64,000 bases of DNA, taken from the NCBI RefSeq assembly GCF_036588685.1, contig NC_086375.1:69502001-69566000 (forward strand). The letters run 5' to 3'. The DNA is from Mytilus trossulus. Its lineage: Eukaryota. A program made the position numbers and the translations under genes. The notes below the pieces were generated by a model, which was not told where the DNA came from, did no database searches, and was given only the letters and a program-made list of their open reading frames with translations. Of the stretch, positions 1,476-64,000 are shown in pieces. Each line of letters starts with the position of its first letter. The stretch's first letter is position 1.

Positions 1476-1770
1476 TTTTATTGTATAGCAATATAATATT
1501 TCCCACAGAAAGGAACCAAAAGTTAGCGTGCAATAAATTCTATTATTGCACTAGTGCAATAAATCTTCAAAAATCATGACGTCATCAACGACAAAACGTC
1601 AGTTTATACCAATTTTAACTTTCAAATATTATATTGCTATACAATAAAAGGGTTATTGCATGAATATTGGGAAGTATTGTCCCTCGAAGAACATATATTG
1701 CACTCGCAAGCTCGTTCAATATAAAATTCTACTCGGGACAATATTCCCCAATATTCATGCACTAACCCTA
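1476..1770. repeat. Palindromic element: inverted pair 1477-1500/1625-1649 plus a ~120-bp hairpin 1650-1768
   Basis: TTTATTGTATAGCAATATAATATT pairs with AATATTATATTGCTATACAATAAA. The hairpin is GGGTTATTGCATGAATATTGGG...CCCAATATTCATGCACTAACCC, with GCAAGC near the apex. Confidence 0.65.
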
Positions 1771-2037
1771 TAATATACGTAAAAATATCTTTCCTTGTAC
1801 CATTAACTTGATTTTGTAAGAAATAAAAGAATCTTGTTAAACATTGACTGTTACAGTATATAAATATCTTGCCGTCGTTGCAATTTGTTACAAATTTATT
1901 TTTGCACATACATCTCTTTGCGAAAAGTTTTTGGTTTTCTCTGAAAAGAAAATCTTTTATTTACTTACATCACGAATATTAAATAAATAATGTACATACA
2001 TATTTACATAACATTCCTCACAATTTTCAAATGTTAA

Positions 2038-3447
2038 TCATGGGACATTATTATAAATGACTGTGTTGTTACTAATTTCGTTTGGAGTCGCACAACCTTC
2101 TGGTGAACACATTTCAGTTTCATTATCTTCCGATGGAGTCACGCCTTCTTCTGGTGAATTTGTACCAGTTTCATTATCTTGCTCTTGAGTCGTGCCACAC
2201 ACTGGTGAACATGCACTGGTTTTGTTCTGTCCAGAATCTTGCAAAACTTCTGATGAAGATGCTCCTTTCTCTTCGTCTAATGGTTTTTGTTTTTCTTGTG
2301 TTCCTTTGTCAGATAATTTTGAGATCTGAGACATATTTGTTTTTGAATCAGTTGATCGGCTACTTGAGGTCAATCTATGAAGTCTGTCCAATATTTTATC
2401 GAGTCGCAGAATCTGTGATACTCCAGCTCGAAATGGACGAGATGAACAGACGTAAAGAAAGAAGTTAACGGTATAATTAAGCTGTTCTAATATTTGAGAG
2501 ACGTCCCGAAAGATTAGAAATTTCTTTGTATTTTGTCCAAAAGCATCTACGCCTATGAAGAAAGCTATATTATGCAGTGCTGTGATCGGGGTAACAAATA
2601 TGACGTATGAAACCATGACGGAAACCTACATTGTCGTGGCCCTTGTTAGATCGGAGCTGTTTCCTTTTGTATTTGTCAGTTTCTTCCGAGCTTTGCTTCG
2701 TCTTTCTAAGCTGACAAGAATAATAAGTGTGACTGTTACTATAATAATTACTGGAATCAGAGAATAAAGACTTGAACCGGCTGTTAGCATGCTCCTGTAT
2801 AATGTTACTGCTTGTGGGTCCTTCCTATCAAAACTATCAGGATTACATACACCTTTGCTGTCAATTTTTGAACAATATGTCCAGCCAGCATTAAAGCCGC
2901 CAATGACAAAATAAACAGCTGCGATTCCTATCAAGCAGTTTCGTTTACTGAAAAAGATCTTTACCCTAAACGGGAATAGGACTGCAGTGAATCTTTCCAG
3001 ACATAAATAAACAACAAACCATGACGACGTCATTTTCCCCGTTCGAAAGAACCAAAAGAATAATTTACAACCAACTTCGGATAAAGCACGTAGATCGCGT
3101 CCAAAGAGCTCTAAGACAAACATCTTGTTGAATGGCTGGGCTAGAAGGAGAGTCACATCTGATACAGCTAAAGCTGCAAAGAAATAACGGGATCCCATTT
3201 TGGAAAAGGCTTTGCTGTTCATTATAAATATTGTGATCAGATTTCCAAAAACTCCAACTACAAGACATGTTGGTAAAATGATAATATTGACATATTCTAG
3301 ACCCTCTAATGCATCGTCGTATACGGTTCTCGTGGATATAGCAGGTGGTTCGTTTGTCTGACAAGTTCCATTGCAGTAGACTGTAGATGTATTGTCTGCC
3401 GAGGTAGTCAATGGTGTCACCGATGTATTTTGAAATAAGGGCTTCAT
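2038..3447 (-). pseudogene. Class A (rhodopsin-like) peptide-type GPCR, copy 1; nonsense codon at the start of TM6
   Basis: ORFs 2626..3483 and 2038..2616 are in the same frame and are separated only by a TAG at 2628-2626, where copy 2 has TTG (Leu). The protein is otherwise highly similar to 5366..6775. The probable true ATG is at 3447, just after a polypyrimidine/CAG acceptor. Confidence 0.85.
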
Positions 3448-5365
3448 TGTAATTGTTCTGGAAAAGATACACAAAAAGAACATTCAGATGAAGGTGTTAA
3501 CTTTATTACTGTTTTAGTGTACATTTATTTTAACTATTATTGAAGGAAAGAAATACCAATTCGTATTGTTTGATGTTACTAAACCTTTAGAATGTACAAA
3601 TATGTTCGATTCTTATTTACCGCAGCGATTGTCTCCTTCCTTCTTTGATATTGTAAATGATTTTTAAAACATAAATACTTTTCAAAAAGTATCATTGCGG
3701 TTTTGATCTACCATTTTGACAATTTTGTCTAAAAAGGATTTTAAGCATCTTGTTCAACATGAACTGTTACAGTATATAAATATCTTGCAGTCGTTGCAAT
3801 TTGTTGATGCAGAAAAGTAATAGATTAGAAAAAGGAGCAATCCTTCTTGCTTGCGATCAATTCGTTTCAGCTCTTGTGAATAGTTGTTTCAATGGCAATC
3901 ATACACCATTTCCTTATTTCTATACTGATTCATCCTTCAAACCAAAAACCAAAAATAAAGAATTTGTCTTCTATTATTAAATAGTCTAAGAGTTTAATGG
4001 CGACTACCCTTGCGAGAATTGCGCCAGATTACCGTATATAAAAACATTTTAAATAAATGTTTTAAAATTATTATTATTTTGGAATTAACCATTTTTTTAT
4101 ATTCATATTAAAGAAATTTGTTGGATTTTTTCCCTTAAATTTAATTTTGTTATTTAAATTTGAACTATGGTGTGTATTTTAGTTATCTTAATTATCTTGT
4201 GGTTAATTTATAGCGAGAAGAAAAATTTCTGTGAGCTTATTATTCCGTTATTTGTAACTTAGCTGTAGCCAGCTTTGTTTATAAATATCAAATGATTTGG
4301 TGGGTAGGTGTGTTTGTTTTTTATTCATGAAAACTTTTAAGTATCAAATAAAAAAAGAAAATTCCGAAACACCTTAAAAGAACAGGAAATTGGTTTGAAA
4401 ATATCACCTTTCAACAAAATATAGGTCTATTAGAGTTTGGACAAACCAATTAGATGAGACTTTAAACTATAGAAAAATTTACAATCTCACGCAACACAAT
4501 GTGATCTTCTGGTATGTTGAAATATTTCAAACTTAATTCATAGTCAATACTTGTAGATATAACTCTCATTATTAATTACCACCATTGCGCATCTTCTAAA
4601 ATATAAATGAACCTTAGTATGTGTACGCGAGTCAAAATAGTCATTCAGAATGAATTGTATAACTCTTTTTAGAATGTTTGTTGTTTTATATGTAAATTTG
4701 TAATATTATGCAACTGTTTTGTAATAGGTGAGACTCAGATAAAGTATTGTTTCAGTGTCTTGTAAGGCTAGACAGACCTTTAAACGTCGACGTCGACAAT
4801 TGAGATTTCTTGATCGCAAGAAACAACATCTCAACGAACCTAATATCACTTTAATTTTCAACAGATTTTGGCATACTATATATACAAAAACATTTGCTAA
4901 TTCAAATTCTCAATTTCAAGCTTCCGGAATATCTGATATTACCCCCCTTTTTTTGGTGGGGTTCGTGTTTCTTAGCATTTATTTTTCCAGATTTGTTTTG
5001 TGTACTATAATTCTTTGTCTGTTTGTCCTTTTTTTTTTTTTTTAGCCATTGCGTTTACAGTCTAATTTGAAAAGCCCCTCTTTTTAAAAGTGAGTGTTTG
5101 AGCAAAATATACAGTTAACCCATTGATATCTGAAACAAACCAACATAATATCAAAAACATTCGTTTAAACATTTATTTTCTAGATTAAGGGGTAACAATA
5201 TCAAATGTAGTTTGCATACAAATTAATTCTAGCACACAAATCTCTATGCGGAGAGTTTTTTGTTTTCTCTGAAAAGAAAATCTTTTATTTACTTACATCA
5301 TGAATATTAAATAAATAATTTACATACATATTTACATAACATTCCTCACAATTTTCAAATGTTAA

Positions 5366-6775
5366 TCATGGGACATTATTATAAATGACTGTGTTGTTAC
5401 TAATTTCGTCTGTAGTCGCAAAACCTTCTGGTGAACACATTCCGGTTTCATTATCTTCCGATGAAGTCGCGCTTCCTTCCGGTGAAGTTGCACCAGTTTC
5501 ATTATCTTGCTCTTGAGTCTCGCTACACACTCGTGAACATGCACTGGTTTTGTTCTGTCCAGAATCTTGCAAAACTTCTGATGAGGATGCTCCTTTCTCT
5601 TCGTCTAATGATTTTTGTTTTTCTTGTGTCCCTTTGTCAGATAGTTTTGAAATCTTAGACGAATTTGTTTTTGAATCAGTTGATCGGATTCTTGAGGTCA
5701 ATCTATGGAGGCTTTCAAATATTTTATCGAGTCGCAGAATCTGTGATACTCCATCTCGAAATGGACGAGATGAACAGACGTACAGAAAGAAGTTAACGGT
5801 ATAATTAAGCTGTTCCAATATTTGAGAGACGTCCCGAAAGATTAGAAATTTCTTTGTATTTTGTCCAAAAGCATCTACGCCTATGTAGAAAGCTATATTA
5901 TGCAGTGCTGTGATCGGGGTAACAAATATGACGTATGAAACCATGACGGAAACCAACATTGTCGTGGCCCTTGTTAGATCGGAGCTGTTTCCTTTTGTAT
6001 TTGTCAGTTTCTTCCGAGCTTTGCTTAGTCTTCCTAAGCTGACAAGAATAATGGGTGTGACTGTTACTATAATGATTATAGGAATCAGAGAATAAAGACT
6101 TGAACCGGCTGTTAGCATACTCCTGTATAATGTAACTGCTTGTGGGTCCTTCCTATCAAAACTATCAGGATTACATACACCTTTGCTGTCAATCTTTGAA
6201 CAATATGTCCAGCCGGCATTAAAGCCGCCAATGACAAAATAAACAGCTACGATTCCTATCAGGCAGTTTCGCTTACTGAAAAAGATCTTTACCCTAAACG
6301 GGAACAGGACTGCCGTGAATCTTTCCAGACATAAATAAACAACAAACCACGACGACGTCATTTTCCCCGTTCGAAAGAACCAAAAGAATAATTTACAACC
6401 AACAGCGGATAAAGCACGTAGATCGCGTCCGAAGAGCTCTAAGACAAACATCTTGTTGAATGGTTGGGCTAGAAGGAGAGTCACATCTGATACAGCTAAA
6501 GCTGCAAGGAAATATCGGGATCCCATTTTGGAAAAGGCTTTGCTGTTCATTATGAATATTGTGATCAGATTTCCAAAAACTCCAACTACAAGACATGTTG
6601 GTAAAAGAATAATATTGACATATTCTAGACCCTCTAATGCATCGTCGTATACGGTTCTCGTGGATATAGCAAATGGTTCGCTTGTCTGACAAGTTCCATT
6701 GCAGTAGACTGTAGATGTATTATTTGCTGAGGTAGTCAATGGTGTCACTGATGTATTTTGTAATAAGGGCTCCAT
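5366..6775 (-). CDS. Class A 7TM GPCR, FMRFamide/TRH-receptor-like invertebrate-expanded type, ~469 aa, single coding exon
   Basis: Seven hydrophobic segments; GN in TM1, LAVSD in TM2, C-K in TM3, LERF (DRY variant), LIP in TM5, TP in TM6, NFFLY (NPxxY variant); N-terminal N-glycosylation sequons. The first 12 codons of ORF 5366..6811 overlap an intron acceptor (TTTTTGTGTATCTTTTCCAG), so Met13 at 6775 is the likely start. Confidence 0.92.
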   Translation of the reverse strand: MEPLLQNTSVTPLTTSANNTSTVYCNGTCQTSEPFAISTRTVYDDALEGLEYVNIILLPTCLVVGVFGNLITIFIMNSKAFSKMGSRYFLAALAVSDVTLLLAQPFNKMFVLELFGRDLRALSAVGCKLFFWFFRTGKMTSSWFVVYLCLERFTAVLFPFRVKIFFSKRNCLIGIVAVYFVIGGFNAGWTYCSKIDSKGVCNPDSFDRKDPQAVTLYRSMLTAGSSLYSLIPIIIIVTVTPIILVSLGRLSKARKKLTNTKGNSSDLTRATTMLVSVMVSYVIFVTPITALHNIAFYIGVDAFGQNTKKFLIFRDVSQILEQLNYTVNFFLYVCSSRPFRDGVSQILRLDKIFESLHRLTSRIRSTDSKTNSSKISKLSDKGTQEKQKSLDEEKGASSSEVLQDSGQNKTSACSRVCSETQEQDNETGATSPEGSATSSEDNETGMCSPEGFATTDEISNNTVIYNNVP

Positions 6776-10607: not shown

Positions 10608-13600
10608 TCAGATTTTGAAAAGTCCAAAATAATTCGCATATTTTGATTTTTTAACATGTCTTATTGCTTCGTCAGAAATTTCGCTCTGCACTACGAGACC
10701 ACTATCAAGTTTAAAAGTTCCACAAAGGAAACTAGTATACACTCTTCTCGTTTCTGAAGATCCACCAAATCTACTTCGCAGTAAAGGTTGTCGTTCTGTC
10801 TTTGGTAGAAGCTTGAGCCATTGCTTAATCTTATGCCGATATAACCCAACAGTAGTAACGTCACCAAAATCAAAGGTAATAGCAGAATAGACGAAATAAA
10901 TACTCGTTTCTACTATTTCAATGCTTTGATTTTTTTCATTGTAGTTCACATCGTTTCTATGTGCGGTTCCGAGGTGGTCACCCTTATACGTCCACGCAAG
11001 ATTCGTTCCTGAAAAAAGTGTAGAACATAAATAAATGTTAGTCCACTAATCGAGATTAAAACGGATACATTGCGATTTATATACAACCTCCCCACCTATT
11101 GTGGTTATCCCATGAACCTCATCAGAAGGTATAATTTATTATGTGATCTTGATGTTGGTTGTCTTTAATTTCGAGAAAAAGGTCTATATGGTTGTCGTTG
11201 AATTTTTATGATAAAGTTGTTCACTCGGAATGATTTAGAACTTGCCATATTGTAAGAGATATTTTTTATGTTGGAGTGTGTGTTGCCTTCTAGATGCCTT
11301 TCGGTTATTTGTTTCCTATTTAATTGCCCCCGAATGACTCCAACGTATTCCTCAAATTCTCTTATCATTGATCTTTAAACATTGAAAATAACTCCAGAGC
11401 CACGTAACCTCTCAGTGTCAAATTGGCATGTCACGTATTTACAAACTGATTGAAAGTAAAGTACAATTATTACTAAAAACTCCCCATCGCTCACTTTTTA
11501 ACGTGACTTCCTGAATTGAACGTGTAAAAGAGAATTGAGAAAAATCATGACTTTGTACATCCAAAATATAAGTATCCAATGGTTGTTGATTGTAAGTGTG
11601 CATAATTGTTTATGAATACACATTTTGTGAAGTTTTTTTTTTATTAATTACAATATCAATGTAAAAAATCTATGCCAAGGATTTTATTACTGTTTAAAAT
11701 GGACAATTTTAGATAAAGGTCAGACAAATAATTGATTGTTTCTTAATTTACGGGCTCTGCAAACAACATCACCGTAAACGTGAGGATATATTTTTGGTTT
11801 TACTTTTAAGTGAAATGTATTTTCTATCAATTATCCAATTCGAACAAAATGATAAATCAAATACCTGTCAGCGTGTTCAAATTTAAATACATGTGGATAG
11901 AATGATGTCTGGTGCTCCACCATTTCATCTTTCTTTCGATCACATAATCTGTAAAGTTAATGTATACTTTGCCTATTCATTTCTATTACAGTTTACTGTA
12001 CGAGCACAAGAAAGCGTTTACTGTAAGGTTTTATTGGCTGTTCATATACCACACAAATTTATTGGAATGGTATACATATTTACCCTATTTACATATACGC
12101 ATTGCTTTGCAATTTTATGCTCGGATGTCTTTTATCTGACACTTCGAATTGCGTAATGTTTATAAATACATTGGCATACAGATTTGTTTTCAATATCTTT
12201 ATAAAATTATATGTCTGTAGTACGGGGCGCCGAATGGGACTCTTGTGGTTTTGTACAAAATTCAATTCTGTCATAACAAAATCAGTTTTGTCTTACAAAA
12301 CTATGTGCTACAGACTTATTTTGTGAGAACTTCAATTTTGTGATGACAAAATTCATTTGTGTAGACAAAATTCATTTTTGTCATGACAAAATTCATTTTT
12401 GTAGACAAAATTCATATTTGTCATGACAAAAGTCAATTTTGTCTAAAAGGTATGCAAATATAAACATATTTGCATACAAAATTGACTTTTGTTACCTGAT
12501 ATGGAAATTAAATCACAAAAGTCAATTGTGTAAGGTAAGATTCAATTTTGTGAGACAAAATTGACTTTTGTGAAACAAAATTAACTTTTGTGAGACAAAA
12601 TTAACTTTTGTGAGACAAAATTGACTTTTGTGAGACAAAATTCAATTTTGTGAGACAAAATTCAATTTTGTGAGACAAAATTCAATTTTGTGAGACAAAA
12701 TTCAATTTGTCATTTTTGTTGAGACAAAAGTCAATTTTGTTAATTGTGTTGAGACAAAAGTCAATTTTGTAAATTTAGTTGAGACAAAAGTCAATTTTGT
12801 TAATTTTGTTGTGACAAAAGTCAATTTTGTCAATTTTGTTGAGACAAAAGTCAATTTTGTCAATTTTGTTGAGACAAAAGTCAATTTTGTGACGACAAAA
12901 TTCATTTTTGTGACGACAAAATTCAATTTTGTAACAACAAATTGACTTTTATGAGACAAAATTGACTTTCGTGAGACAAAATTGACTTTCGTGAGACCAA
13001 AATCAATTTTGTTGAGACAAAAATCAATTTTGTTGAGACAAAAATCAATTTTGTTGAGACAAAATTCAATTTTGTTAATTTTGTTGAGACAAAATTCAAT
13101 TTTGTCAATTTTGTTGAGACAAAATTCAATTTTGTCAATTTTGTTGAGACAAAAGTCAATTTTGTCTCACATTGGTCAATTTTGTCTCACAAAAGTCAAT
13201 TTTGTGTAACAAAAGTCAATTTTGTGTAACAAAAGTCAATTTTGGGTAACAACAGTCAATTTTGTGTAACAAAAGTCAATTTTGTGTAACAAAAGTCAAT
13301 TTTGTGTAACAAAAGTCAATTTTGTGTAACAAAAGTCAATTTTGTGTAACAAAAGTCAATTTTGTGTAACAAAAGTCAATTTTGTGTAACAAAAGTCGAT
13401 TTTGTATGCAAATTAGTTCACAGAAACCAAACTAAACTAATTTGAATACAAAATTGACTTTTGTCGCTCAATTTTCAAATTAGGTAACAAAAGTCAAGTC
13501 TGTGTAACAAAAATGAATTTTGTCATGACAAAAGTGACTTTTGTCCGCTGATAGATAATTTTGTATGACAAAATTACAAATTTGTAGTATGATACAAATT

Positions 13601-15426: not shown

Positions 15427-15986
15427 TGTTAGTCTATCGACGACTATATACTATCCAAATTACTAATTGTTAGTCTGTCAGGAAGTATTTTGAATTGAAC
15501 ACATTAAAATTTTAAAAGGAAATTAAAACTTATATGCCAATAAAATAAACACTTCCTTGATACTCATAAAACAATGAAGTCATTTCCACATCTGAACTGA
15601 CTAAATGTATTATGTGTAAAATCCTGTTTTATTCAAACTAACAATGCACCAAACCGGTGGATGACCTCAAAAAGTACTTGGAAATCCACAAACTGTGACA
15701 GCCTACATCTTGTCGTTGCGTTTTCATGTTCCCTTCGACTGGTGGGTTCCGAATTTCTTCTTGGTGTCTTCTTTTAGTGTGTGTAAAATATATGTCTTTT
15801 CCAGATTTTGAAACGTGTCCATATTTCAGACGACTCTTGACAGTCCAAGATTTGCAATTATTCTTTCAAAAGGAGAAGAGCATGCAGATAAACAGAACAG
15901 TGACCATTATGTTTCAATTATATTTCCCCAGTAAATCTCCCTGAGGCCTCACCGTCTTAACCCAATATGTAGAAACTCATCTCTTA

Positions 15987-17111
15987 AGCTGGGGGCACAC
16001 ATTCACGATTTTTACTACCGTTCTCGACAGGAACATTCCCGATTAAAATTTATCAAAAGTCTGATCAAGATCCTGTGAATCGTGGATGGAAATTCAAACT
16101 TAAATCAAAATTTGTAAAGCTGGAGTCACACATTCACGATTTTTACCGCCGTCCTTGACAGGACCGTTCCCGATTGAAATTTATTAAAAGTCTGATCAAG
16201 ATCCTATGAATCGTGGATGGAAATTCAAACTTAAATTAAAATTTGTAAAAAAAAATATTTAATCACGACAACAATCAGCTATTGTACAGATAGCGTCGAT
16301 ATTCAACCGTTTCCAAGCGAATTTATCCCGATAATCTTGTTCTAAATCCGTTTCTAATCCGATTTGTATCTTTCGCCAGGTAAAATTCGACCGAGTCTGT
16401 CACGACTGCGTCCCGATTCTACCGAATGTAATCCGACAGAGATCAGATAGTGACAAGAGAGTGAACCGACGCTGACGGAAGTTATCCGTTCGAAAACTGT
16501 CGGCATACTCGGGATGATCAGGTACTGTCGGAACGTAATCCTATCACGGTCCTCTCTATCGTATTGCAAACGGCTTTGTCTGGTCTCAGTCGTATTGTGT
16601 TCTGTAATTGTCGGGACTCTGACGTGGGTATCATTGACATATTTAGAATTTATAACGGGACGGTTTCGGAACGATTTCGGCAAAAACGGTTCGCAATCGA
16701 CAAGGTCTGGATGCAATCTGGACTCAATCGGCAGAAAAACAGCAATGAAAAATTTCTCCAGATCATTCCCGTTCCACAGGACACCGTCCCGAATACACAG
16801 AACATTGTTAGGAATTCGATCCGATACAGCAGAATCTGTCACGCCATAGGCACCATTGTAATCCGACTAGACAAAATCGGCTGAGTTCCCCCGAATGTTA
16901 CGGGACGCACCTAACTGTCGGGGTGCTTTGCCGAACTATTCGGACCCTTCTTGACCAGTAGGAATCTGTTACGAACTGAAACGACTGCGTTTAGACAATA
17001 ATAGGACATTCCAGATAATTGAGGATACTAATCCGACTTTTTCACTTTTCGTGTCGTATCGTTGTCTGATCTCAAACGGGAGCAATAATCGGCAATGTGT
17101 GAACCCCGCAT
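15987..17111. mobile_element. GC-rich non-autonomous DNA transposon, PIF/Harbinger-like, with ~131-bp tandem duplication of its left end
   Basis: Termini AGCTGGGGGCACACATT / AATGTGTGAACCCCGCAT with TTA/TAG flanks. 15987-16117 is repeated at 16118-16248. The internal ORFs have no recognisable domain. Confidence 0.6.
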
Positions 17112-22234: not shown

Positions 22235-23270
22235 TAAACATAAAATTGAGAATGGAAATGGGGAATGTATCAAAGAGACAACAACCCGACCATAGAAAAA
22301 ACAACAGCAGAAAGTCACCAACAGGTCTTAATGTAAGGAGAAATTCCCGCACCCGGAGGCGTCCTTCAGCTGGCCCCTAACATATATATACTAGTTCAGT
22401 GATAATGAACGCCATACTAATTTCCAAATTGTACACAAGAAACGAAAATTAAAATAATACAAGTCTAACAAAGACCAGACGCTCCTGACTTGGGACAGGC
22501 GCAAAAATGTGGTGGAGTCAAACATGTTTATGAGATCTCATCCCTCCCCCTATACCGCTAGCCAATGTAGAAAAGTAAACGCATAACAATACGTACATTT
22601 AAAATTCAATTCAAGAGAAGTCCGAGACTGATGTCAGGAGATGTAACCAAAGAAAATAAACAAAATGACAATTATACATAAATAATAACAGACTACTAGC
22701 AGTTAACTGACATGCCAGCTCCAGACTTCAATTAAACTGATTGAAAGATTATGATTTCATCATATGAATATCAGGCATAATCCTTCCCGTTAGGGGTTTA
22801 GTATCATACCATCATAACATATATGAGAAGAACATAACCCGTGTCATGCCAACAACTTGTTTTTGAAAAAATGTGTTTAGTTCCGATGCAAAGACCCTAT
22901 AAGTGAATTAATATTAACGCCAAAATATGCAATCTTTAATGACCTGACAACAATATTGTAACTATATCCTTTCTTAATAAGACTATTTAAAGGTTTTGTT
23001 AGTTTCTGCGGTGAATACTGACATTTTTGTGCTTTATAAAGAATATTTCCATAAAAACATTGGATGTGAAATGCCTAAACGTATAAGAAGTCTGCATGTT
23101 GAGCTATATTTACGAATGATGTCCTTATACCGATGATAACATTTAGTAAATGTTTTGACTATTTTGTGATATCGAAAACCCTGGTGTAATAATCTTCTAG
23201 TAATACATAAATTTCTCTCATTTAAATCTAAAAAATTGTTACATACACGAGCGAATCGTACAAGTTGAGA
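22235..23270 (-). mobile_element. 3' part of a Naiad-type Penelope-like retroelement (RT C-terminus + 3' UTR); continuation of 30800-32560
   Basis: The minus strand reads SQLVRFARVCNNFLDLNERNLCITRRLLHQGFRYHK...GSLHRN*, resuming exactly after ...YGVYI at 30800. It is homologous to SQLIRYSRAC...RKLLNQEF of the 26371 ORF. Confidence 0.82.
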
Positions 23271-30012: not shown

Positions 30013-30444
30013 AAACTCATCATAGATACCAGGACTAAAATTTGTGTATACGCCAGACGCGCGTTCCGTCTACAAAAGACTCATCAGTAACGCTCGAATC
30101 CAAAAAAGTTAAAAAGGTAAAAAAAGTACGAAGTTGAAGAGCTTTGAGGACCAAAATTCCTAAAAGTGTTGCCAAATACAGGTAAGGTAATCTATGCATG
30201 AGCCTTAGTATTTCAAAAAATTATAAATTTTGTAAACAGTAAATTTATAACTATAACCATATCATGACAATTAATGTCAGCACAAAAGTGCTGATTACTG
30301 GGTTTGTGATACCCTCGGGGAAATAAATCTCCACCAGCAGTGGAATCGACCCAGTGGTAGTAAATAAACACATCATAGATACCAGGACTAAAATTTGTTT
30401 ATACGCCAGACGCGCGTTTCGTCTACAAAAGACTCATCAGTGAC
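30013..30444 (-). mobile_element. Non-LTR retrozyme: ~353-bp monomer bounded by two type I hammerhead motifs
   Basis: Direct repeat CATCATAGATACCAGGACTAAAATTTG... at 30018 and 30371. The minus-strand core CTGATGA...GAAA is intact at ~30402-30444 and mutated (GGAA) at ~30049-30095. Confidence 0.85.
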
Positions 30445-54183: not shown

Positions 54184-55344
54184 GTAATATTAGTATACTC
54201 CTAAGAACCCGAAACACAGGAAAATGGTACGAATCAATAAATTACCTTTAAACATGTAATCGTATTTTGAAAATTTGTGCCACTTAACAAAAAGCGTATG
54301 ATGAAAATAACTTTTAATTTGAAATATTTAACTAGATGCGACAATCCTGTTCAAAATTTGGTCTCCAATTATATGCATAAAAAATGCATTATATGATGAT
54401 TAACAGTGTGTGCATGAACGGAATGTAAAATACAAAGATTGTATTGTCATTTATCGTGTTATTGCTGATATCATAGATCCCTGGGATTTAGATTTGTTTA
54501 AGAACGCACCGGGAATTATATGGAAGATAACTTGTAGTAATATATCTTTACCAGAGGTTTTTTTATTCGTTTTCATTCGTACAGTAAAACTCATGGTTAA
54601 TAAGGCGTCCGCTTTGTAGGATGTATAATTACGCTGCAACTTCAAGTCGGAATTTGGGAAGTCAAAAACTATCCAATATCGTATGCATGGAATCGATGCA
54701 TGAGTATAACGCTCTCTGCGCATTTAAGGTCCTATGAATAAGTTTACAAATGGCCGAAAGATTGTCTAGATTTTTTTTTCAAGGCAAAGGTTTGGCATTT
54801 AATCAAATCATTCATTTTCCATTGGCAGTCGAAAACTCTCAAGGCCTGCCAATTGGATTGGTTGTTATGTTATTACCGACACGAATATGCTATCAAGTGT
54901 AACGATTTTCTTTATGCAGTGATGCTTTTACTTTAATTATCATCCGTAAACAATTATCGGCATCTTACATACAACCAGAATAACATGCACTTTAAAGTCA
55001 GATAAAAAATACTGAATATAAAGGTATATTGATCAGATAACATAAATTGTATTTATGTAAAATACTGATTTAAAATTTAAAAACCATGACTTCAATCAAG
55101 TAAATATAAACTAACATATGAAAATTTTACACTGTAACCACCCACATACAATATTATATATTGTTTTATTTTAGACGTATGTATCGATATTCATTTTATT
55201 TATCCAAACATACAGATAAAAACCTATAGAATTATTAAACGATTAACAAACAGTTCATTTTCAGAAGTGGAACATAAAAATTATACTTTATGTCAAAAGT
55301 ACAATCAGGCATCATTAACTTCGGAAACGAAACGTTCACCAACA

Positions 55345-58300
55345 CTGGCTTGTAAACACTCATCAAATATAACTGATTTAACATTTGCCCAGCCAGACGC
55401 GCGTTTAGTTAACAAGAGGCTCACCAATGGCACTAAACATATACCAACAGTTGGAAAGCCAAATCTTAGACGAAGTTGAGCATTTAAAATAGAAAAATCT
55501 TTAAAAATTGTGCCAAATATGGCTTAGGCATTTAAGGCATTGGAAAGACACCTTAGTACTATTTGATCATTTTATAATCAATATTTTAACATAAATTTAA
55601 ATAATAATGATATTTACTGTCAACACAAAAAGGTCTTACAACTTGTTTGGTTAAACTCTCCCTGACAAAAAGGTCTTACTACTTGTTTGGTTAAACTCTC
55701 CCTGACAAAAAGGTCTTACTACTTGTTTGGTTAAACTCTCCCTGAAAAAAGTTATTACTACTTGTTTGGTTAAACTCTCCCTGACAAAAAGTTCTTACTA
55801 CTTGTTTGGTTAAACTCTCCCTGACAAAAAGTTCTTACTACTTGTTTGGTTAAACTCTCCCTGACAAAAAGGTCTTACTACTTGTTTGGTTAAACTCTCC
55901 CTGACAAAATATTCCTACTACTTGTTTGGTTAAACTCCCCCTGAAAAAAGTTATTACTACTTGTTTGGTTAAACTCTCCCTGACAAAAAGTTCTTACTAC
56001 TTGTTTGGTTAAACTCTCCCTGACAAAAAGTTCTTACTACTTGTTTGGTTAAACTCTCCCTGACAAAAAGTTCTTACTACTTGTTTGGTTAAACTCTCCC
56101 TGACAAAAAGTTCTTACTACTTGTTTGGTCAAACTCTCCCTGACAAAATATTCCTACTACTTGTTTGGTTAAGCTCTGCCTGACAAAAAGTTCTTACTAC
56201 TTGTTTGGTTAAACTCTCCCTGAAAAAAGTTATTACTACTTGTTTGGTTAAACTCTCCCTGACAAAAAGGTCTTACTACTTGTTTGGTTAAACTCTCCCT
56301 GAAAAAAGTTATTACTACTTGTTTGGTTAAGCTCTGCCTGACAAAAAGTTCTTACTACTTGTTTGCTCTGCCTGACAAAAAGTTCTTACTACTTGTTTGG
56401 TTAAACTCTCCCTGAAAAAAGTTATTACTACTTGTTTGGTTAAACTCTCCCTGACAAAATGTTCTTACTACTTGTTTGGTTAAACTCTCCCTGACAAAAA
56501 GGTCTTACTACTTGTTTGGTTAAACTCTCCCTGGCAAACGTTCTTACTACTTGTTTGGTCAAACTCTCCCTGACAAAATATTCCTACTACTTGTTTGGTT
56601 AAGCTCTGCCTGACAAAAAGTTCTTACTACTTGTTTGGTTAAACTCTCCCTGAAAAAAGTTATTACTACTTGTTTGGTTAAACTCTCCCTGACAAAAAGT
56701 TCTTACTACTTGTTTGGTTAAACTCTCCCTGACAAAAAGGTCTTACTACTTGTTTGATTAAACTCTCCCTGACAAAAAGGTCTTACTACTTGTTTTGTTA
56801 AACTCTCCTTGACAAAAGTTCTTACTACTTGTTTGGTTAAACTCTCCCTGACAAAAAGGTCTTACTACTTGTTTGGTTAAACTCTCCCTGACAAAAAGGT
56901 CTTACTACTTGTTTGGTTAAACTCTCCCTGACAAAAAGGTCTTACTACTTGTTTGGTTAAACTCTCCCTGACAAAAAGGTCTTACTACTTGTTTGGTTAA
57001 ACTCTCCCTGACAAAAGTTCTTACTACTTGTTTGGTTAAACTCTCCCTGACAAAAAGGTCTTACTACTTGTTTGGTTAAACTCTCCCTGACAAAATGTTC
57101 CTACTACTTGTTTGGTTAAACTCTCCCTGACAAAAAGGTCTTACTACTTGTTTGGTTAAACTCTCCCTGACAAAAAGGTCTTACTACTTGTTTGGTTAAA
57201 CTCTCCCTGACAAAAAGGTCTTACTACTTGTCTGGTTAAACTCTCCCTGACAAAAAGGTCTTACTACTTTTTCGGTTAAACTCTCCCTGACAAAAAGGTC
57301 TTACTACTTGTTTGGTTAAACTCTCCCTGACAAAAAGGTCTTACTACTTGTTTGGTTAAACTCTCCCTGACAAAAAGGTCTTACTACTTGTTTGGTTAAA
57401 CTCTCCCTGACAAAAAGGTCTTACTACTTGTTTGGTTAAACTCTCCCTGACAAAATATTCCTACTACTTGTTTGGTTAAGCTCTGCCTGACAAAAAGTTC
57501 TTACTACTTGTTTGGTTAAACTCTCCCTGAAAAAAGTTATTACTACTTTTTCGGTTAAACTCTCCCTGACAAAAAAGTTCTTACTACTTGTTTGGTTAAC
57601 TCTCCCTGACAAAAAGTTCTACTACTTGTTTGGTTAAACTCTCCCTGATAAAATGTTCCTACTACTTGTTTGATTAAACTCTCCCTGGCAAACGTTCTTA
57701 CTACTTGCTTGTTTAAACTCTCCCTGACAAAAAGTTATTACTACTTGTTTGGTTAAACTCTCCCTGACAAAAAGTTCTTACTACTTGTTTGCTTAAACTC
57801 TCCCTGACAAAAATTTCTTACTTCTTGTTTGGTTAAACTCTCCCTGACAAAAAGTTCTACTACTTGTTTGGTTAAACTCTCCCTGACAAAATGTTCTTAC
57901 TACTTGTTTGGTTTAATTCTCCCTGACAAAAAGTTCTTACTACTTGTTTGGTTAAACTCTCCCTGACAAAAAGTACTTACTACTTGTTTGGTTAAACTCT
58001 CCCTGACAAAAAGTTCTTACTACTTGTTTGGTTAAACTCTCCCTGACAAAAAGGTCTTACTACTTGTTTGGTTAAACTCTCCCTGGCAAACGTTCTTACT
58101 ACTTGTTTGTTTAAACTCTCCCTGACAAAAAGTTCTTACTACTTGTTTGGTTAAACTCTCCCTGACAAAAAGGTCTTACTACTTGTTTGGTTAAACTCTC
58201 CCTGACAAAAAGGTCTTACTACTTGTTTGGTCAAACGCTCCCTGACAAAATGTTCCTACTACTTGTTTGGTTAAACTCTCCCTGGCAAACGTTCTTACTA

Positions 58301-61300
58301 CTTGTTTGTTTAAACTCTCCCTGACAAAAAGTTATTACTACTTGTTTGGTTAAACTCTCCCTGACAAAAAGTTCTTACTACTTGTTTGCTTAAACTCTCC
58401 CTGACAAAAATTTCTTACTTCTTGTTTGGTTAAACTCTCCCTGACAAAAAGTTCTACTACTTGTTTGGTTAAACTCTCCCTGACAAAAAGTTCTTACTAC
58501 TTGTTTGGTTTAATTCTCCCTGACAAAAAGTTCTTACTACTTGTTTGGTTAAACTCTCCCTGACAAAAAGTACTTACTACTTGTTTGGTTAAACTCTCCC
58601 TGACAAAAAAATCTTACTACTTGTTTGGTTAAACTCTCCCTGACAAAAAGGTCTTACTACTTGTTTGGTTAAACTCTCCCTGACAAAAAGGTCTTACTAC
58701 TTGTTTGGTCAAACGCTCCCTGACAAAATGTTCCTACTACTTGTTTGGTTAAACTCTCCCTGGCAAACGTTCTTACTACTTGTTTGTTTAAACTCTCCCT
58801 GACAAAAAGTTATTACTACTTGTTTGGTTAAACTCTCCCTGAAAAAAAAGTTCTTACTACTAGTTTGGTTAAACTCTCCCTGACAAAAAGTTCTTACTAC
58901 TTGTTTTGTTAAACTCTCCTTGACAAAAGTTCTTACTACTTGTTTGGTTAAACTCTCCCTGACAAAAAGGTCTTACTACTTGTTTGGTTAAACTCTCCCT
59001 GACAAAAAGTTATTACTACTTGTTTGGTTAAGCTCTCCCTGACAAAAAGGTCTTACTACTTGTTTGGTTAAACTCTCCCTGACAAAAAGTTCTTACTACT
59101 TGTTTGGTTAAACTCTCCCTGACAAAAAAATTCTTACTACTTGTTTGGTTAAACTCTCCCTGACAAAAAGTTCTTACTACTTGTTTGGTTAAACTCTCCC
59201 TGACAAAAAGGTCTTACTACTTGTTTGGTTAAACTCTCCCTGATAAAATGTTCCTACTACTTGTTGGACTTAACTCTCCCTGGCAAAAGTTCTTACTACT
59301 TGTTTGGTTAAACTCTCCCTGACAAAAAGTTCTTACTACTTGTTTGGTTAAACTCTCCCTGATAAAATGTTCCTACTACTTGTTTGGTTAAACTCTACCT
59401 GACAAAAAAATTCTTACTAATTGTTTGGTTAAACTCTCCCTGACAAAAAGTTATTACTACTTGTTTGGTTAAACTCTCCCTGACAAAAAGGTCTTACTAC
59501 TTGTTTGGTTAAACTCTCCCTGATAAAATGTTCCTACTACTTGTTTGGTTAAACTCTCCCTGACAAAAAGTTCTTACTACTTGTTTGGTTAAACTCTCCC
59601 TGACAAAAAGTTCTTACTACTTGTTTGGTTAAACTCTCCCTGGCAAACGTTCTTACTACTTGTTTGTTTAAACTCTCCCTGACAAAAAGGTCTTACTACT
59701 TGTTTGGTTAAACTCTCCCTGACAAAAAGGTCTTACTACTTGTTTGGTTAAACTCTCCCTGATAAAATGTTCCTACTACTTGTTTGGTTAAACTCTCCCT
59801 GACAAAAAGTTATTACTACTTGTTTGGTTTAATTCTCCCTGACAAAAAGTTCTTACTACTTGTTTGGTTAAACTCTCCCTGACAAAAAGTACTTACTACT
59901 TGTTTGGTTAAACTCTCCCTGACAAAAAGGTCTTACTACTTGTTTGGTTAAACTCTCCCTGACAAAAAGGTCTTACTACTTGTTTGGTTAAACTCTCCCT
60001 GACAAAAAGGTCTTACTACTTGTTTGGTCAAACGCTCCCTGACAAAATGTTCCTACTACTTGTTTGGTTAAACTCTCCCTGGCAAACGTTCTTACTACTT
60101 GTTTGTTTAAACTCTCCCTGACAAAAAGTTATTACTACTTGTTTGGTTAAACTCTCCCTGAAAAAAAAGTTCTTACTACTAGTTTGGTTAAACTCTCCCT
60201 GACAAAAAGTTCTTACTACTTGTTTTGTTAAACTCTCCTTGACAAAAGTTCTTACTACTTGTTTGGTTAAACTCTCCCTGACAAAAAGGTCTTACTACTT
60301 GTTTGGTTAAACTCTCCCTGACAAAAAGTTATTACTACTTGTTTGGTTAAGCTCTCCCTGACAAAAAGGTCTTACTACTTGTTTGGTTAAACTCTAGCTG
60401 ACAAAAAGTTCTTACTACTTGTTTGGTTAAACTCTCCCTGACAAAAAAATTCTTACTACTTGTTTGGTTAAACTCTCCCTGACAAAAAGTTCTTACTACT
60501 TGTTTGGTTAAACTCTCCCTGACAAAAAGGTCTTACTACTTGTTTGGTTAAACTCTCCCTGATAAAATGTTCCTACTACTTGTTGGATTAAACTCTCCCT
60601 GGCAAAAGTTCTTACTTCTTGTTTGGTTAAACTCTCCCTGACAAAAAGTTCTTACTACTTGTTTGGTTAAACTCTCCCTGATAAAATGTTCCTACTACTT
60701 GTTTGGTTAAACTCTCCCTGACAAAAAGTTCTTACTACTTGTTTGGTTAAGCTCTCCCTGACAAAAAGGTCTTACTACTTGTTTGGTTAAACTATCCCTG
60801 ATAAAATGTTCCTACTACTTGTTTGGTTAAACTCTCCCTGACAAAAAGTTCTTACTACTTGTTTGGTTAAACTCTCCCTGGCAAACGTTCTTACTACTTG
60901 TTTGTTTAAACTCTCCCTGACAAAAAGGTCTTACTACTTGTTTGGTTAAACTCTCCCTGACAAAAAGGTCTTACTACTTGTTTGGTTAAACTCTCCCTGA
61001 TAAAATGTTCCTACTACTTGTTTGGTTAAACTCTCCCTGACAAAAAGGTCTTACTACTTGTTTGGTTTAATTCTCCCTGACAAAAAGTTCTTACTACTTG
61101 TTTGGTTAAACTCTCCCTGACAAAAAGTACTTACTACTTGTTTGGTTAAACTCTCCCTGACAAAAAGTTCTTACTACTTGTTTGGTTAAACTCTCCCTGA
61201 CAAAAAGGTCTTACTACTTGTTTGGTTAAACTCTCCCTGACAAAAAGGTCTTTTTACTTGTTTGGTCAAACGCTCCCTGACAAAATGTTCCTACTACTTG

Positions 61301-62985
61301 TTTGGTTAAACTCTCCCTGGCAAACGTTCTTACTACTTGTTTGTTTAAACTCTCCCTGACAAAAAGTTATTACTACTTGTTTGGTTAAACTCTCCCTGAA
61401 AAAAAAGTTCTTACTACTAGTTTGGTTAAACTCTCCCTGACAAAAAGTTCTTACTACTTGTTTTGTTAAACTCTCCTTGACAAAATGTTCTTACTACTTG
61501 TTTGGTTAAACTCTCCCTGACAAAAAGGTCTTACTACTTGTTTGGTTAAACTCTCCCTGACAAAAAGTTATTACTACTTGTTTGGTTAAGCTCTCCCTGA
61601 CAAAAAGGTCTTACTACTTGTTTGGTTAAACTCTCCCTGACAAAAAGTTCTTACTACTTGTTTGGTTAAACTCTCCCTGACAAAAAGGTCTTACTACTTG
61701 TTTGGTTAAACTCTCCCTGACAAAAAGTTATTGCTACTTGTTTGGTTAAGCTCTCCCTGACAAAAAGGTCTTACTACTTGTTTGGTTAAACTCTCCCTGA
61801 CAAAAAGTTCTTACTACTTGTTTGGTTAAACTCTCCCTGACAAAAAAATTCTTACTACTTGTTTGGTTAAACTCTCCCTGACAAAAAGTTCTTACTACTT
61901 GTTTGGTTAAACTCTCCCTGACAAAAAGGTCTTACTACTTGTTTGGTTAAACTCTCCCTGATAAAATGTTCCTACTACTTGTTTGGTTAAACTCTCCCTG
62001 ACAAAAAGGTCTTACTACTTGTTGGATTAAACTCTCCCTGGCAAAAGTTCTTACTACTTGTTTGGTTAAACTCTCCCTGACAAAAAGTTCTTACTACTTG
62101 TTTGGTTAAACTCTCCCTGACAAAAAAATTCTTACTAATTGTTTGGTTAAACTCTCCCTGACAAAAAGTTATTACTACTTGTTTGGTTAAACTCTCCCTG
62201 ACAAAAAAATTCTTACTAATTGTTTGGTTAAACTCTCCCTGACAAAAAATTCTTACTAATTGTTTGGTTAAACTCTCCCTGACATAAAGTTATTACTACT
62301 TGTTTGGTTAAACTCTCCCTGACAAAAAGGTCTTACTACTTGTTTGGTTAAACTCTCCCTGATAAAATGTTCCTACTACTTGTTTGGTTAAACTCTCCCT
62401 GACAAAAAGTTCTTACTACTTGTTTGGTTAAACTCTCCCTGACAAAAAGTTATTACTACTTGTTTGGTTAAACTCTCCCTGATAAAAAGTCCACCTACAT
62501 TGACATCGTTCCAGTCGTTGTTATTACCCATCAAAGATAACAGGTTAAAATTTGGCCAACAAATGCGCGTTTCGCTTACATAAGGCGGCTTGTCAATGGC
62601 ACTCAAATAACAACAGTTGGAAGACCGAATCATAAATTTAGCATTCAATTTTCTTTTCAAAAGGTGTGCAAAGTAAGTCTTAGGCAATCTATACCTTAGT
62701 GTTATTTCAACATTTATAAACAATAGATTTACAGAAATTCTAAATAACAATAATGATATGTCATGTTAACACAAAAGTGCTAAATACTGGGTTGGTTATA
62801 CTTTCCAGTAGCGATATCGTTCTAATGGTTGTAAACACGTATTAAAGATAGCAGGCTTAAAATGTGTTACGCCTGGCACGCGTTAGGCCTTTCAGTGGCA
62901 TTTGAGTTAAAACAGTTTGAATGCCAAAATCAAAGCAATTTAAACTGACAATTTCGAAAAGTTCTGCCAAATCATCTAAGGTAGC
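55345..62985 (-). mobile_element. Degenerate tandem retrozyme array hosting the 40-bp satellite
   Basis: Decayed hammerhead-like motifs at ~55393-55435, ~62560-62605 and ~62870-62900. The flanks match the 30013-30444 monomer in order. Confidence 0.65.
55625..62481. repeat. Tandem array of a 40-bp unit (ACAAAAAGTTCTTACTACTTGTTTGGTTAAACTCTCCCTG), ~171 copies, with higher-order structure
   Basis: Directly visible. Diagnostic variants recur at ~1.32- and ~1.24-kb spacing. Confidence 0.98.
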
Positions 62986-63549
62986 ACTACACAGTTAGGT
63001 GTGTAGTTTCGTATTTTGGCCCCTGTAGATTTTTCAAATATGAAAGCTGGTATGCAATAAAATAAATTTTGTGATAGCTGAGTACTAGAATAGCCTTCGT
63101 TTTGGGTTTATATGAACATCAAGATTATGTAATGTACGTAATATATAGGCTATTTTCTGTATAACAGTCCGTTTTTGCATGTCCATACCATACATTGGTC
63201 CGGCAATTATTGTAATGTTTTTTTCCAATTTTTTGTCGCACAAACTTTATGATTAGATATTAACAAAAAAAAAGAGTCGAAAGACACTCATTTTTTATTT
63301 GATCATTAGGAAGATTAATGTCAACAGTTTTCAAAAAGGTATCACTCAAAGGCATTGAAATTCTACTTTGATCTAAATTTTGGGGGGATATGTTCACGCC
63401 CCTTTTTTTTTTGCAATATTTGATTGTAAATAAATGTAGAATGTTGCCATTGATATACATAAAAGGAATTATTTTTACCCTTTCAACTTTTAAAAATCAA
63501 ATCTATTAAAGATGATGATTACATACATATGGACATATACAACACAACT

Positions 63550-64000
63550 AGTTTCGTCTACATAAGACTCATCAGTGACGCTCAGATCAAAACAGTTAAA
63601 AGGCCAAATAAATACAAAGTTGAAGAGCATTGAGGACCCGAAATTCAAAAAAGTTGTGCAAAATTCGGCTAAGGTAATCAACCCTGGGTGTAAGAAAATC
63701 CTTAGTTTTTCGAAAAATTCAAAGTTTTGAAAACAGGAAATTTATAAAAATTACCATATAATTGATATTCATGTCAACATCGAAGTGTTGACTACTGGGC
63801 ATGTGAAACAAACAGTGAGGTTAATGTATTAGAAATCCAGGAATCAAGGATGAGAAAAAATTTTGTGGCTCATTTTTTGTTTTATTTTCTAACTGTGGAG
63901 TGCTACCTATATATACTCGAATAATAGTTATCAAAGGTACCAGAATTATAATTTAGTACGCCAGACGCGCGTTTCGTCTACATAAGACTCATCAGTGACG
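63550..64000 (-). mobile_element. Retrozyme copies with type I hammerhead cores (63551-63583 partial; ~63957-64000 intact core)
   Basis: Reverse complement of CGTCA-CTGATGA-GTCTTATGTAGAC-GAAA-CGCGCGTCTGGCGTA, identical to the copy at 21226-21269. Confidence 0.85.

What the first reader, a model, noticed from the sequence alone, without database searches (positions are those of the whole stretch)
55345..62985. A 6.9-kb satellite born inside a hammerhead-retrozyme monomer
Seen: the 40-bp unit (ACAAAAAGTTCTTACTACTTGTTTGGTTAAACTCTCCCTG) resembles one internal segment of the retrozyme monomer (ACAAAAGTGCTGATTACTGGGTTTGTGATACCCTCGGGG at 30282-30320; also 62770-62806). It sits at the matching position, after ...TGTCAAC and before ...TCCACC..CATCG..CCAGT. 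The decayed ribozyme motifs on either side (GCGCGTTT at 55399 and 62565) are 7166 bp apart. Collapsing the array to one unit gives ~349 bp, close to the 353-bp and ~346-bp monomer lengths elsewhere in this window. Known: mussel non-LTR retrozymes are ~350-nt hammerhead-bearing repeats that give circular RNAs. Inference: a ribozyme retroelement seeded a new satellite, and both parental flanks are still intact. The array is far more homogeneous than its decayed host, so amplification came long after insertion.
Basis: partly seen in the sequence, partly recalled or inferred. Interest (0 to 1): 0.8.

Follow-up and report, generated by a model that had tools for sequence, protein, structure and literature searches.

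The report
Minisatellite born inside a dead retrozyme
In one old, inactive copy of a mussel-type hammerhead "retrozyme" repeat, a 40-base internal piece has been copied head-to-tail about 172 times into a 6.9-kb array found nowhere else in the genome; it is a very clean but ordinary example of a new tandem repeat arising from a mobile element.

Summary
A 40-bp tandem array lies at 55625-62490: 171 full units plus an 8-nt partial unit, with 93% pairwise identity between units. It sits inside one decayed monomer of a short retrozyme array (Z'-A-B-C', 55318-62983). A family profile aligns through both junctions into the first and last unit. With the array collapsed to one unit, monomer A is 340 bp and colinear with the 353-bp monomer (z = 20). 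The unit's best match in all 26 family monomers tested is at the colinear place. The 29-nt unit core occurs 168 times in the 1.3-Gb assembly, all within this array, so this is a single-locus minisatellite rather than a dispersed satellite family.

The array has the form (8-nt direct repeat + 32 nt)n + 8-nt direct repeat. This fits a first duplication by slippage between two short direct repeats. Later growth by unequal exchange is shown by blocks of about 31-33 units (about 1.3 kb) that are 95.5-97% identical.

The same genome holds other arrays internal to retrozyme copies (35 bp x30, 43 bp x9, 34 bp x4.6, 47 bp x2) and one copy with the reciprocal 39-nt deletion. The process is therefore recurrent and has no special hot spot.

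The kind is well known (minisatellites derived from transposable elements). Only the host element class is new. Interest is moderate to low.

The parts
55318..55377 (-). Z': 3' part of a decayed upstream retrozyme monomer (profile positions 278-349). It keeps a single copy of the region and an intact ACGAAACG repeat.
   Evidence: nhmmer E=4.4e-4 on the 801-nt upstream stretch. The element's sense strand is minus because the family's hammerheads are on the minus strand.
55384..55624 (-). Host monomer A, left part (profile about 8-245), ending ...ACTGTCAAC at the array.
   Evidence: nhmmer hit 55391-55671 = profile 8-293, E=1.6e-22. Mean identity to 13 family monomers is 71.6%.
55391..55435 (-). 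Dead hammerhead remnant of monomer A (GCGCGTTT kept; the CTGATGAG and GAAAC cores are mutated).
   Evidence: Sequence. No Rfam hammerhead at E<=10.
55625..62490 (.). 40-bp minisatellite: 171 units plus an 8-nt partial unit, 6866 bp, homologous to profile positions about 246-287 of the retrozyme monomer.
   Evidence: TRF. Unit census: 52 variants. Mean pairwise identity 93.4%. Unique in the genome.
55625..55632 (.). Direct repeat 1 (ACAAAAAG), the start of the first unit. It corresponds to ACACCGAAG in the family.
   Evidence: nhmmer alignment; sequence.
62483..62490 (.). Direct repeat 2 (ATAAAAAG), the terminal partial unit. It corresponds to ACGAAACG, which precedes TCCACC in the family.
   Evidence: nhmmer alignment 62447-62550; sequence.
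58643..60361 (.). Clearest higher-order duplication inside the array. Ten consecutive identical units at 58643-59042 recur at 59962-60361, a lag of 33 units. Blocks of 30 units at lags 31 and 33 are 95.5-97.1% identical, against 91-93% for other offsets.
62491..62549 (-). Host monomer A, right part (profile about 296-354), beginning TCCACCTACATTGACATCG.
   Evidence: nhmmer hit 62447-62550 = profile 252-354, E=3.3e-8. Identity to the family is 72.5%.
62550..62863 (-). Host monomer B (312 bp), decayed, with a single copy of the segment at 62769-62806.
   Evidence: nhmmer 62560-62863 = profile 11-356, E=3.8e-25. Local alignment of the unit to B's segment gives 30 identical columns of about 37; a global alignment gives 30/40. 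No hammerhead detectable.
62867..62983 (-). C': truncated third monomer (profile 5-145), the end of the old insertion.
   Evidence: nhmmer E=2.1e-5 and 4.3e-7.

Best explanation
An old insertion of about 2.3 tandem monomers of a hammerhead retrozyme (Z'-A-B-C') lost its ribozymes by point mutation. Within monomer A, a stretch of about 40 bp bounded by two short, similar A-rich direct repeats was duplicated. The repeats are ACAAAAAG and ATAAAAAG here, and ACACCGAAG and ACGAAACG in the family. The duplication most likely arose by replication slippage or misaligned repair between the repeats. Once two units existed, unequal sister-chromatid or homologue exchange, together with further slippage, expanded and homogenised the array to about 172 units. 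Part of that growth came from duplicating blocks of about 31-33 units (about 1.3 kb). The result is a non-coding, single-locus minisatellite with no sign of a function of its own.

Shown: homology and colinearity, uniqueness in the genome, the (direct repeat + 32 nt)n + direct repeat architecture, the higher-order blocks, and the presence of the junction in a second organism label.

Inferred: the slippage mechanism of the first duplication, and the timing.
For: - Array parameters.
- Colinear alignment of the collapsed locus, z = 20.
- The family profile aligns across both junctions into the units.
- The unit's best local match in all 26 monomers is on the + strand at the colinear place. It scores 30, against 17-26 elsewhere. 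Shuffled units reach that score in 1 of 2000 and 5 of 2000 trials.
- The unit is as diverged from the family (69%) as the flanks are (72%). Its best-matching counterpart among those compared is the segment in the adjacent decayed monomer B, at 75-81%. It shares about four derived bases with B, counted by eye on the alignments. The unit is therefore the host's own segment, not a young donor.
- All 168 genome-wide matches to the core lie in this array.
- The terminal ATAAAAAG aligns to the family's ACGAAACG just before TCCACC.
- A young copy elsewhere (L071) lacks exactly this segment, through a 39-nt deletion between the same repeats. This is the reciprocal product.
- Higher-order blocks.
- A contig from organism B (record 14) spans 62458-62657 with one mismatch.
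- Other sub-monomer duplications and arrays in the family show that the process is routine.
Against: - The two direct repeats are short (8 nt, 7 of 8 identical), and array homogenisation may have reshaped them.
- One deletion example (L071) is only anecdotal support for slippage at these repeats.
- The units form no notable hairpin that would favour slippage (z = +0.6 to +1.0).
- The timing argument cannot separate a late first duplication from an early one followed by continuous concerted evolution.
- The copy number rests on one assembly. The only outside check is contig word depth, which the tool itself warns is not a copy number.
Confidence: 0.87

Rival explanations
1. The array was made by the reverse transcriptase during retrotransposition, through template switching or slippage of the Penelope-like enzyme on the circular or multimeric retrozyme RNA. 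On this view it was born with the insertion rather than by later DNA-level events.
For: Retrozymes are thought to be copied from circular RNA by a Penelope-like reverse transcriptase (PMC7229834; bioRxiv 10.64898/2026.07.22.740005). The 35-bp x30 array on C88 sits exactly at the truncated end of a young copy. A perfect 47-bp duplication travels with at least 8 monomers on C1, so some duplications do pass through the RNA or monomer amplification cycle.
Against: The unit carries about the same load of substitutions relative to the family as the flanks do (69% against 72%), while units are 93% alike. The higher-order block duplications are DNA-level events. The neighbouring monomers Z' and B, laid down in the same insertion, carry one copy or none. 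Each C88 unit includes 5 nt that are identical to the first bases of the downstream flank, which points to duplication after insertion there too.
Confidence: 0.05
2. An unrelated 40-bp minisatellite arose or landed at this point, and its likeness to the retrozyme segment is chance.
For: Unit against family is only about 69% over 40 nt. The genome is full of minisatellites with 30-45 bp periods: a loose three-anchor pattern found 284 matches, and its reversed control found 226.
Against: The best match is at the colinear place and on the right strand in 26 of 26 monomers. Shuffled units almost never reach that score. The profile alignments run continuously from both flanks into the units. The collapsed length restores a monomer. 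No other locus holds the unit, so there is no donor.
Confidence: 0.03
3. The array is real, but its length and higher-order pattern are partly assembly artefacts (mis-expansion or collapse of a repeat).
For: Only one assembly was seen. All public runs available here are Logan contigs, which cannot span the array.
Against: The 52 unit variants fall into an ordered, non-periodic pattern with diverged block copies (95.5-97%), which is unlike assembler stutter. In run X1, array words have about 100-200 times the word depth of the flank (about 1400-5400 against 23-47). That is the order expected for 100-200 units, though it is a rough figure.
Confidence: 0.05

Closest known systems
[quoted passage not shown]
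   Same: A short internal piece of a non-autonomous retroelement is duplicated in place and expanded by slippage and unequal exchange. The element's flanks stay recognisable on both sides.
   Different: The host here is a hammerhead retrozyme, not a SINE. The searches of the held paper library made here found no report of a sub-monomer array from a retrozyme. At 172 units and 6.9 kb it is large for a single-locus array.
Satellites born from tandem repeats inside LTR retrotransposons (Ogre elements in Lathyrus; PMC7004042), and Tetris foldback elements in Drosophila virilis (PMC4079207)
   Same: An internal TE repeat serves as the seed of long arrays. Both short in-element arrays and long arrays occur.
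   Different: In those cases the arrays spread to many loci and become true satellite families. This one is confined to one locus, and its host copy is dead, so it cannot spread by transposition.
Metazoan non-LTR retrozymes of mussels (PMC7229834; bioRxiv 10.64898/2026.07.22.740005)
   Same: The host is a member of this family. It has monomers of about 350 bp in tandem, and the intact relatives carry a type I hammerhead per monomer.
   Different: Those papers treat the whole monomer as the repeat unit (a 'minisatellite' of about 350 bp). Here a 40-bp sub-monomer piece forms a second-order array, and the host's ribozymes are inactive.
Satellite-like repeats carried by Helentron/pearl elements in oysters and other bivalves (PMC7492417)
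   Same: A link between TEs and tandem repeats in a bivalve genome.
   Different: Those repeats are a built-in part of a mobile DNA transposon and are scattered with it. This array arose after insertion, at one site.

Membership tests
TE-derived minisatellite (in-situ amplification of an internal TE segment) | Head-to-tail units of about 10-100 bp | tested here: met
   Period 40, 172.2 copies, 92% matches.
TE-derived minisatellite (in-situ amplification of an internal TE segment) | The unit is homologous to an internal segment of the TE | tested here: met
   Best match at profile positions about 246-287 in 26 of 26 monomers. Shuffles reach the score in 1-5 of 2000 trials. The profile aligns into the units.
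TE-derived minisatellite (in-situ amplification of an internal TE segment) | TE sequence is colinear on both sides of the array, and collapsing the array restores the element | tested here: met
   Collapsed length 340 bp against 353 bp, z = 20. nhmmer gives profile 8-293 on the left and 252-354 on the right.
TE-derived minisatellite (in-situ amplification of an internal TE segment) | Copy-number variation between individuals (VNTR behaviour) | tested here: inconclusive
   Array-to-flank word depth is about 100-200x in X1 but about 10-20x in X2 and X3. These are contig depths, not copy numbers.
Satellite DNA family in the strict sense | Abundant and present at many loci or in long heterochromatic arrays | tested here: not met
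   All 168 genome-wide matches are in this one 6.9-kb array.
Metazoan non-LTR retrozyme (the host element) | Tandem monomers of about 150-450 bp homologous to the family | tested here: met
   Z'-A-B-C' match a profile of 353-358-bp monomers. The family forms arrays elsewhere in the genome.
Metazoan non-LTR retrozyme (the host element) | A type I hammerhead ribozyme in every monomer (the definition of an active retrozyme) | tested here: not met
   No hammerhead at E<=10 in A, B or C'. Intact copies in the window score 25-29 bits. The host is a dead member of the family.
Metazoan non-LTR retrozyme (the host element) | Expression as self-cleaved linear and circular RNA | not testable with these tools
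   No RNA run on record. Run X7 is only guessed to be RNA, and it holds array words only.

The most novel reading that the evidence does not exclude
Retrozymes may be an unusually productive nursery of new tandem repeats. In this one genome the family has spawned at least four independent sub-monomer arrays (40 bp x172, 35 bp x30, 43 bp x9, 34 bp x4.6), plus duplications that ride along with amplifying monomers. If this rate exceeds that of other repeats of like age and copy number, something in retrozyme biology would be driving minisatellite birth. Candidates are copying from circular RNA with template switching, or recombination within tandem monomers. The large array here would then be the first step of a retrozyme-to-satellite pathway in bivalves.
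Probability: 0.12. Interest if true: 0.55.

Novelty: new member of a known kind. Interest (0 to 1): 0.33.

Why it matters
The locus is an unusually legible record of how a tandem repeat is born. The parent element, both junctions, the short direct repeats that probably primed the first duplication, a reciprocal deletion in a sister copy, and the later block duplications can all still be read.

It adds hammerhead retrozymes to the list of mobile elements known to seed minisatellites. It also shows that sub-monomer duplication is common in this family.

In practice, a single-locus array of about 170 units that is shared by two organism labels could serve as a hypervariable marker. It does not change what is known about how such repeats arise, and nothing suggests a cellular function.

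Tried and rejected
1. Hot-spot idea. Searching for two nearby copies of the segment's conserved 16-mer found a second array on C88. However, the same test with three other conserved 16-mers of the monomer also found duplications and an array. The segment is therefore not special.

2. Loose pattern search. A three-anchor pattern (TACTGGG three times, gaps 22-38) was not specific: 284 matches against 226 for the reversed control. It mainly shows that the genome is full of minisatellites. It did turn up the C5 array by chance.

3. Hairpin-driven slippage. Three-unit stretches of the array (both strands) and of the C88 array fold no better than shuffles.

4. A separate repeat family sharing the segment. 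The very high word depth and foreign flanks at 62752-62801, and the 50-bp hits, suggested this. The three loci fetched are ordinary retrozyme copies of another subfamily.

5. Transcription. The only run guessed to be RNA (X7) holds array words but no flank. Low-coverage DNA explains that equally well, so it was not used as evidence.

6. Self-megablast of the array at >=97% and >=400 bp returned nothing. The higher-order structure was shown with unit labels and block alignments instead.

7. Coding potential. No ORF of 90 aa or more lies wholly inside the array. The only ORF touching it (62388-62750, minus strand, 120 aa, TTG start) starts about 100 bp inside the array's right end and lies mostly in the flank.

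8. Limits met along the way. The window holds no N. Read laying was given 830 letters.
Full report
WHAT IS THERE

Tandem Repeats Finder reports one long array at 55625-62490: period 40, 172.2 copies, 92% matches. Cutting the array at the conserved 3' part of the unit gives 171 units: 135 of 40 nt, 26 of 39 nt, 9 of 41 nt, and one fused pair. An ATAAAAAG(T) tail follows. There are 52 distinct variants, and the two commonest occur 38 and 30 times. Mean pairwise identity of the 40-nt units is 93.4%, and identity to the majority unit is 96.1%. The variation is concentrated at positions 7-12, next to the A-run, and units near the array ends are no more diverged than those in the middle. No ORF of 90 aa or more lies wholly inside the array; the one ORF that touches it lies mostly in the right flank. 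The window has no N.

THE HOST

The window holds several copies of a repeat of about 353 bp. The clean copy at 30044-30396 is followed by the start of a second monomer. Each intact copy carries a type I hammerhead on the minus strand (Rfam RF00163 at 25-29 bits, below the gathering score of 34 but with the full core). The same family forms tandem arrays of 353-358-bp monomers at many places in the 1.30-Gb assembly. This matches the retrozymes described for the Mediterranean mussel: about 5000 hammerhead copies, repeats of 350-390 bp, and abundant circular RNAs (PMC7229834). A 2026 preprint links these elements to Penelope-like elements (10.64898/2026.07.22.740005).

A profile built from 11 family monomers (nhmmer) marks the following around the array:
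- 55391-55671 = profile positions 8-293 (E = 1.6e-22)
- 62447-62550 = positions 252-354 (E = 3.3e-8)
- 62560-62863 = positions 11-356 (monomer B)
- 62867-62983 = positions 5-145 (truncated C')
- upstream, 55318-55377 = positions 278-349 (partial Z')

The array therefore lies inside monomer A of an old insertion of about 2.3 monomers. No hammerhead is detectable in A, B or C' even at E<=10, whereas the young copies a few hundred bases downstream are detected.

IS THE UNIT A PIECE OF THE MONOMER?

Four lines of evidence say yes.

1. The two profile hits above run from the left flank 47 nt into the array, and from 44 nt inside the array out into the right flank. Both place the unit at profile positions about 246-287.

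2. With the array collapsed to one unit, monomer A is 340 bp (241 + 40 + 59). It aligns end to end with the 353-bp monomer with a score of 206.5, against 47 +/- 7.9 for shuffles (z = 20).

3. The unit's best local match in each of 26 family monomers is on the same strand at the colinear place. It scores 30, against 17-26 anywhere else. Shuffled units reach that score anywhere in a monomer in only 1 of 2000 and 5 of 2000 trials.

4. The unit is about as far from the family (69% mean, 74% maximum) as the flanks are (72%). Its best-matching counterpart among those compared is the segment in the adjacent decayed monomer B: 30 identical columns of about 37 in a local alignment, and 30 of 40 in a global one. 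It shares about four derived bases with B; I counted these by eye on the alignments. The unit is therefore the host copy's own, already mutated segment, not a fresh piece from an active element.

ONE LOCUS OR MANY?

The 29-nt core of the unit, with up to 3 mismatches allowed, has 168 matches in the whole assembly. All are on the + strand. The window's array by itself contains exactly 168 matches. The reversed control pattern has none. An 80-nt similarity search found a single candidate locus. This is a single-locus minisatellite, not a dispersed satellite family.

HOW IT PROBABLY AROSE

In the family, the segment is bounded by two short, similar words...CAAC-ACACCGAAG-(segment)-GGGG-ACGAAACG-TCCACC.... 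In the host these read ACAAAAAG at the start of the first unit (55625) and ATAAAAAG just before TCCACC (62483). The array thus has the form (8-nt repeat + 32 nt)n + 8-nt repeat. This is the signature of a first duplication by slippage or misaligned repair between two direct repeats 40 bp apart. I infer, but have not shown, that loss of CpGs in both words made them more alike in this old copy.

A young family copy on another chromosome (L071) carries the reciprocal product: a clean 39-nt deletion of just this segment between the same two words. That is a single example, so it supports the model without proving it. The units do not form hairpins that would favour slippage.

Later growth was at least partly by unequal exchange of larger blocks:
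- Unit variants recur at lags of 31, 33 and 64 units.
- Ten consecutive identical units at 58643 recur at 59962.
- Thirty-unit blocks at those lags are 95.5-97.1% identical, against 91-93% at other offsets.

TIMING

A and B are 77% identical over 267 aligned columns, and each is about 72% identical to the family. The units are 93% identical to each other, and the large blocks 95.5-97%. The caveat is that concerted evolution keeps arrays homogeneous. The first duplication could therefore be older than the coalescence of the present units.

OTHER INDIVIDUALS

Public runs holding parts of the stretch come from two coded organism labels plus mollusc metagenomes. All are kept as contigs. Laid on 62171-63000, a 200-nt contig from organism B (record 14) covers 62458-62657 with one mismatch, which puts 33 nt in the array and 167 nt in the flank. 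The right junction therefore exists outside the assembled individual.

Word depth of array words relative to the flank is about 100-200x in run X1 and about 10-20x in X2 and X3. This is compatible with a large array and perhaps with copy-number differences. The tool warns that such depths are not copy numbers, so I treat this as a consistency check only. A run guessed to be RNA holds only array words, which low-coverage DNA would also explain.

NOT A ONE-OFF

Looking for other arrays of the same segment, I found the following in this genome:

- C88:190090-191108. A young, right-truncated retrozyme copy ends in 30 tandem units of 35 bp (96% matches). Each unit is 30 nt of the same segment plus ATACA, which is also the first 5 nt of the flank. 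That duplication was therefore made on DNA after insertion.
- C5, about 29.921 Mb. A decayed monomer carries 9.2 units of 43 bp that begin at the same place. A hammerhead remnant lies just downstream.

Control searches with three other conserved 16-mers of the monomer also found duplications:
- A 34-bp x4.6 array at profile positions 73-109, embedded in a monomer on C2.
- A perfect 47-bp duplication carried by at least 8 monomers of an array on C1.
- Several single duplications of 26-56 bp, including one of the hammerhead region.

Sub-monomer duplication is thus routine across the monomer, with no evidence for a hot spot. The window's array is the extreme case among those seen.

COMPARISON WITH WHAT IS KNOWN

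Minisatellites and satellites seeded by internal pieces of transposable elements are well documented. Examples are thousands of human TE-derived minisatellites, a mouse VNTR from SINE B1, Ogre-derived satellites and Tetris (PMC9659126, PMC7004042, PMC4079207). Bivalve genomes are known for links between TEs and tandem repeats (PMC7492417, PMC11136912). The retrozyme papers treat the whole monomer of about 350 bp as the repeating unit. The 2026 preprint discusses retrozyme arrays themselves as minisatellites, and neither it nor the other papers found describes a second-order array made from a sub-monomer piece. I therefore file this as a new member of a known kind: the mechanism class is ordinary, and only the host element class is new.

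A note on method: the retrozyme is a non-coding cellular repeat, not a virus or provirus. I used a profile and a majority 40-mer for comparison only, and I give no full-length consensus.

VERDICT

Confidence in in-situ origin from the host monomer is about 0.87. Confidence in the direct-repeat slippage step specifically is about 0.6. Interest is 0.33.

Noticed in passing
L084 (G000:C88:189300-191900), array at locus positions 781-1819, read on the minus strand: A second minisatellite derived from a retrozyme: 35 bp x30, 96% matches, at the truncated end of a young retrozyme copy. Each unit is 30 nt of the same internal segment plus ATACA, which matches the first 5 nt of the downstream flank.
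   Followed up: partly
L085 (G000:C5:29920500-29921900), array at locus positions 494-891: A 43-bp x9.2 array inside a decayed retrozyme monomer. It starts at the same internal place and is bounded by GTTGTGA words, with a hammerhead remnant just downstream.
   Followed up: partly
L087 (G000:C2:92026600-92027500) and L088 (G000:C1:64560100-64560800): A 34-bp x4.6 array from a different part of the monomer (profile 73-109), embedded colinearly. Separately, a perfect 47-bp duplication (profile 284-331) recurs in at least 8 monomers of one retrozyme array, so it has been propagated with the monomer.
   Followed up: partly
L071 (G000:C8:80574336-80577584), locus positions about 1500-1510: A young retrozyme copy with a clean 39-nt deletion of exactly the segment that is amplified in the window, between the same two short direct repeats.
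   Followed up: partly
L086 (G000:C4:90870100-90871400), locus positions 472-814: A 43-bp x8 minisatellite that shares a 12-nt word (CTTACTACTTGT) with the window's unit and ACTACTGGG with the retrozyme segment. It has no retrozyme flanks (no nhmmer hit at E<=10), so the likeness is probably chance.
   Followed up: partly
window 63551-63809 and 63953-64000: Two young retrozyme pieces (79-97% identical to the 353-bp monomer by BLAST; hammerhead-like Rfam matches at 63546-63597 and 63958-64000) lie just downstream of the old decayed insertion. The first stops at profile position 278. Right-hand truncation points in the family vary widely (227-337), as expected for incomplete reverse transcription.
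   Followed up: partly
window 22761-22825 (minus strand): An Rfam SECIS_1 match exactly at the gathering score (35 bits, E = 0.003), which hints at a selenoprotein 3' UTR on the minus strand.
   Followed up: no
window 12331-13406: About 1 kb of nested 20/30/40-bp tandem repeats built on a TTTTGT...ACAAAA word, with 69-96% matches between sub-arrays. They are unrelated to the retrozyme.
   Followed up: no
window 15986-16249: A 131-bp x2 tandem duplication, 90% matches.
   Followed up: no
whole genome: Minisatellites with 30-45 bp periods are very common in this genome. A loose three-anchor pattern and its reversed control each hit hundreds of places in dozens of arrays.
   Followed up: no
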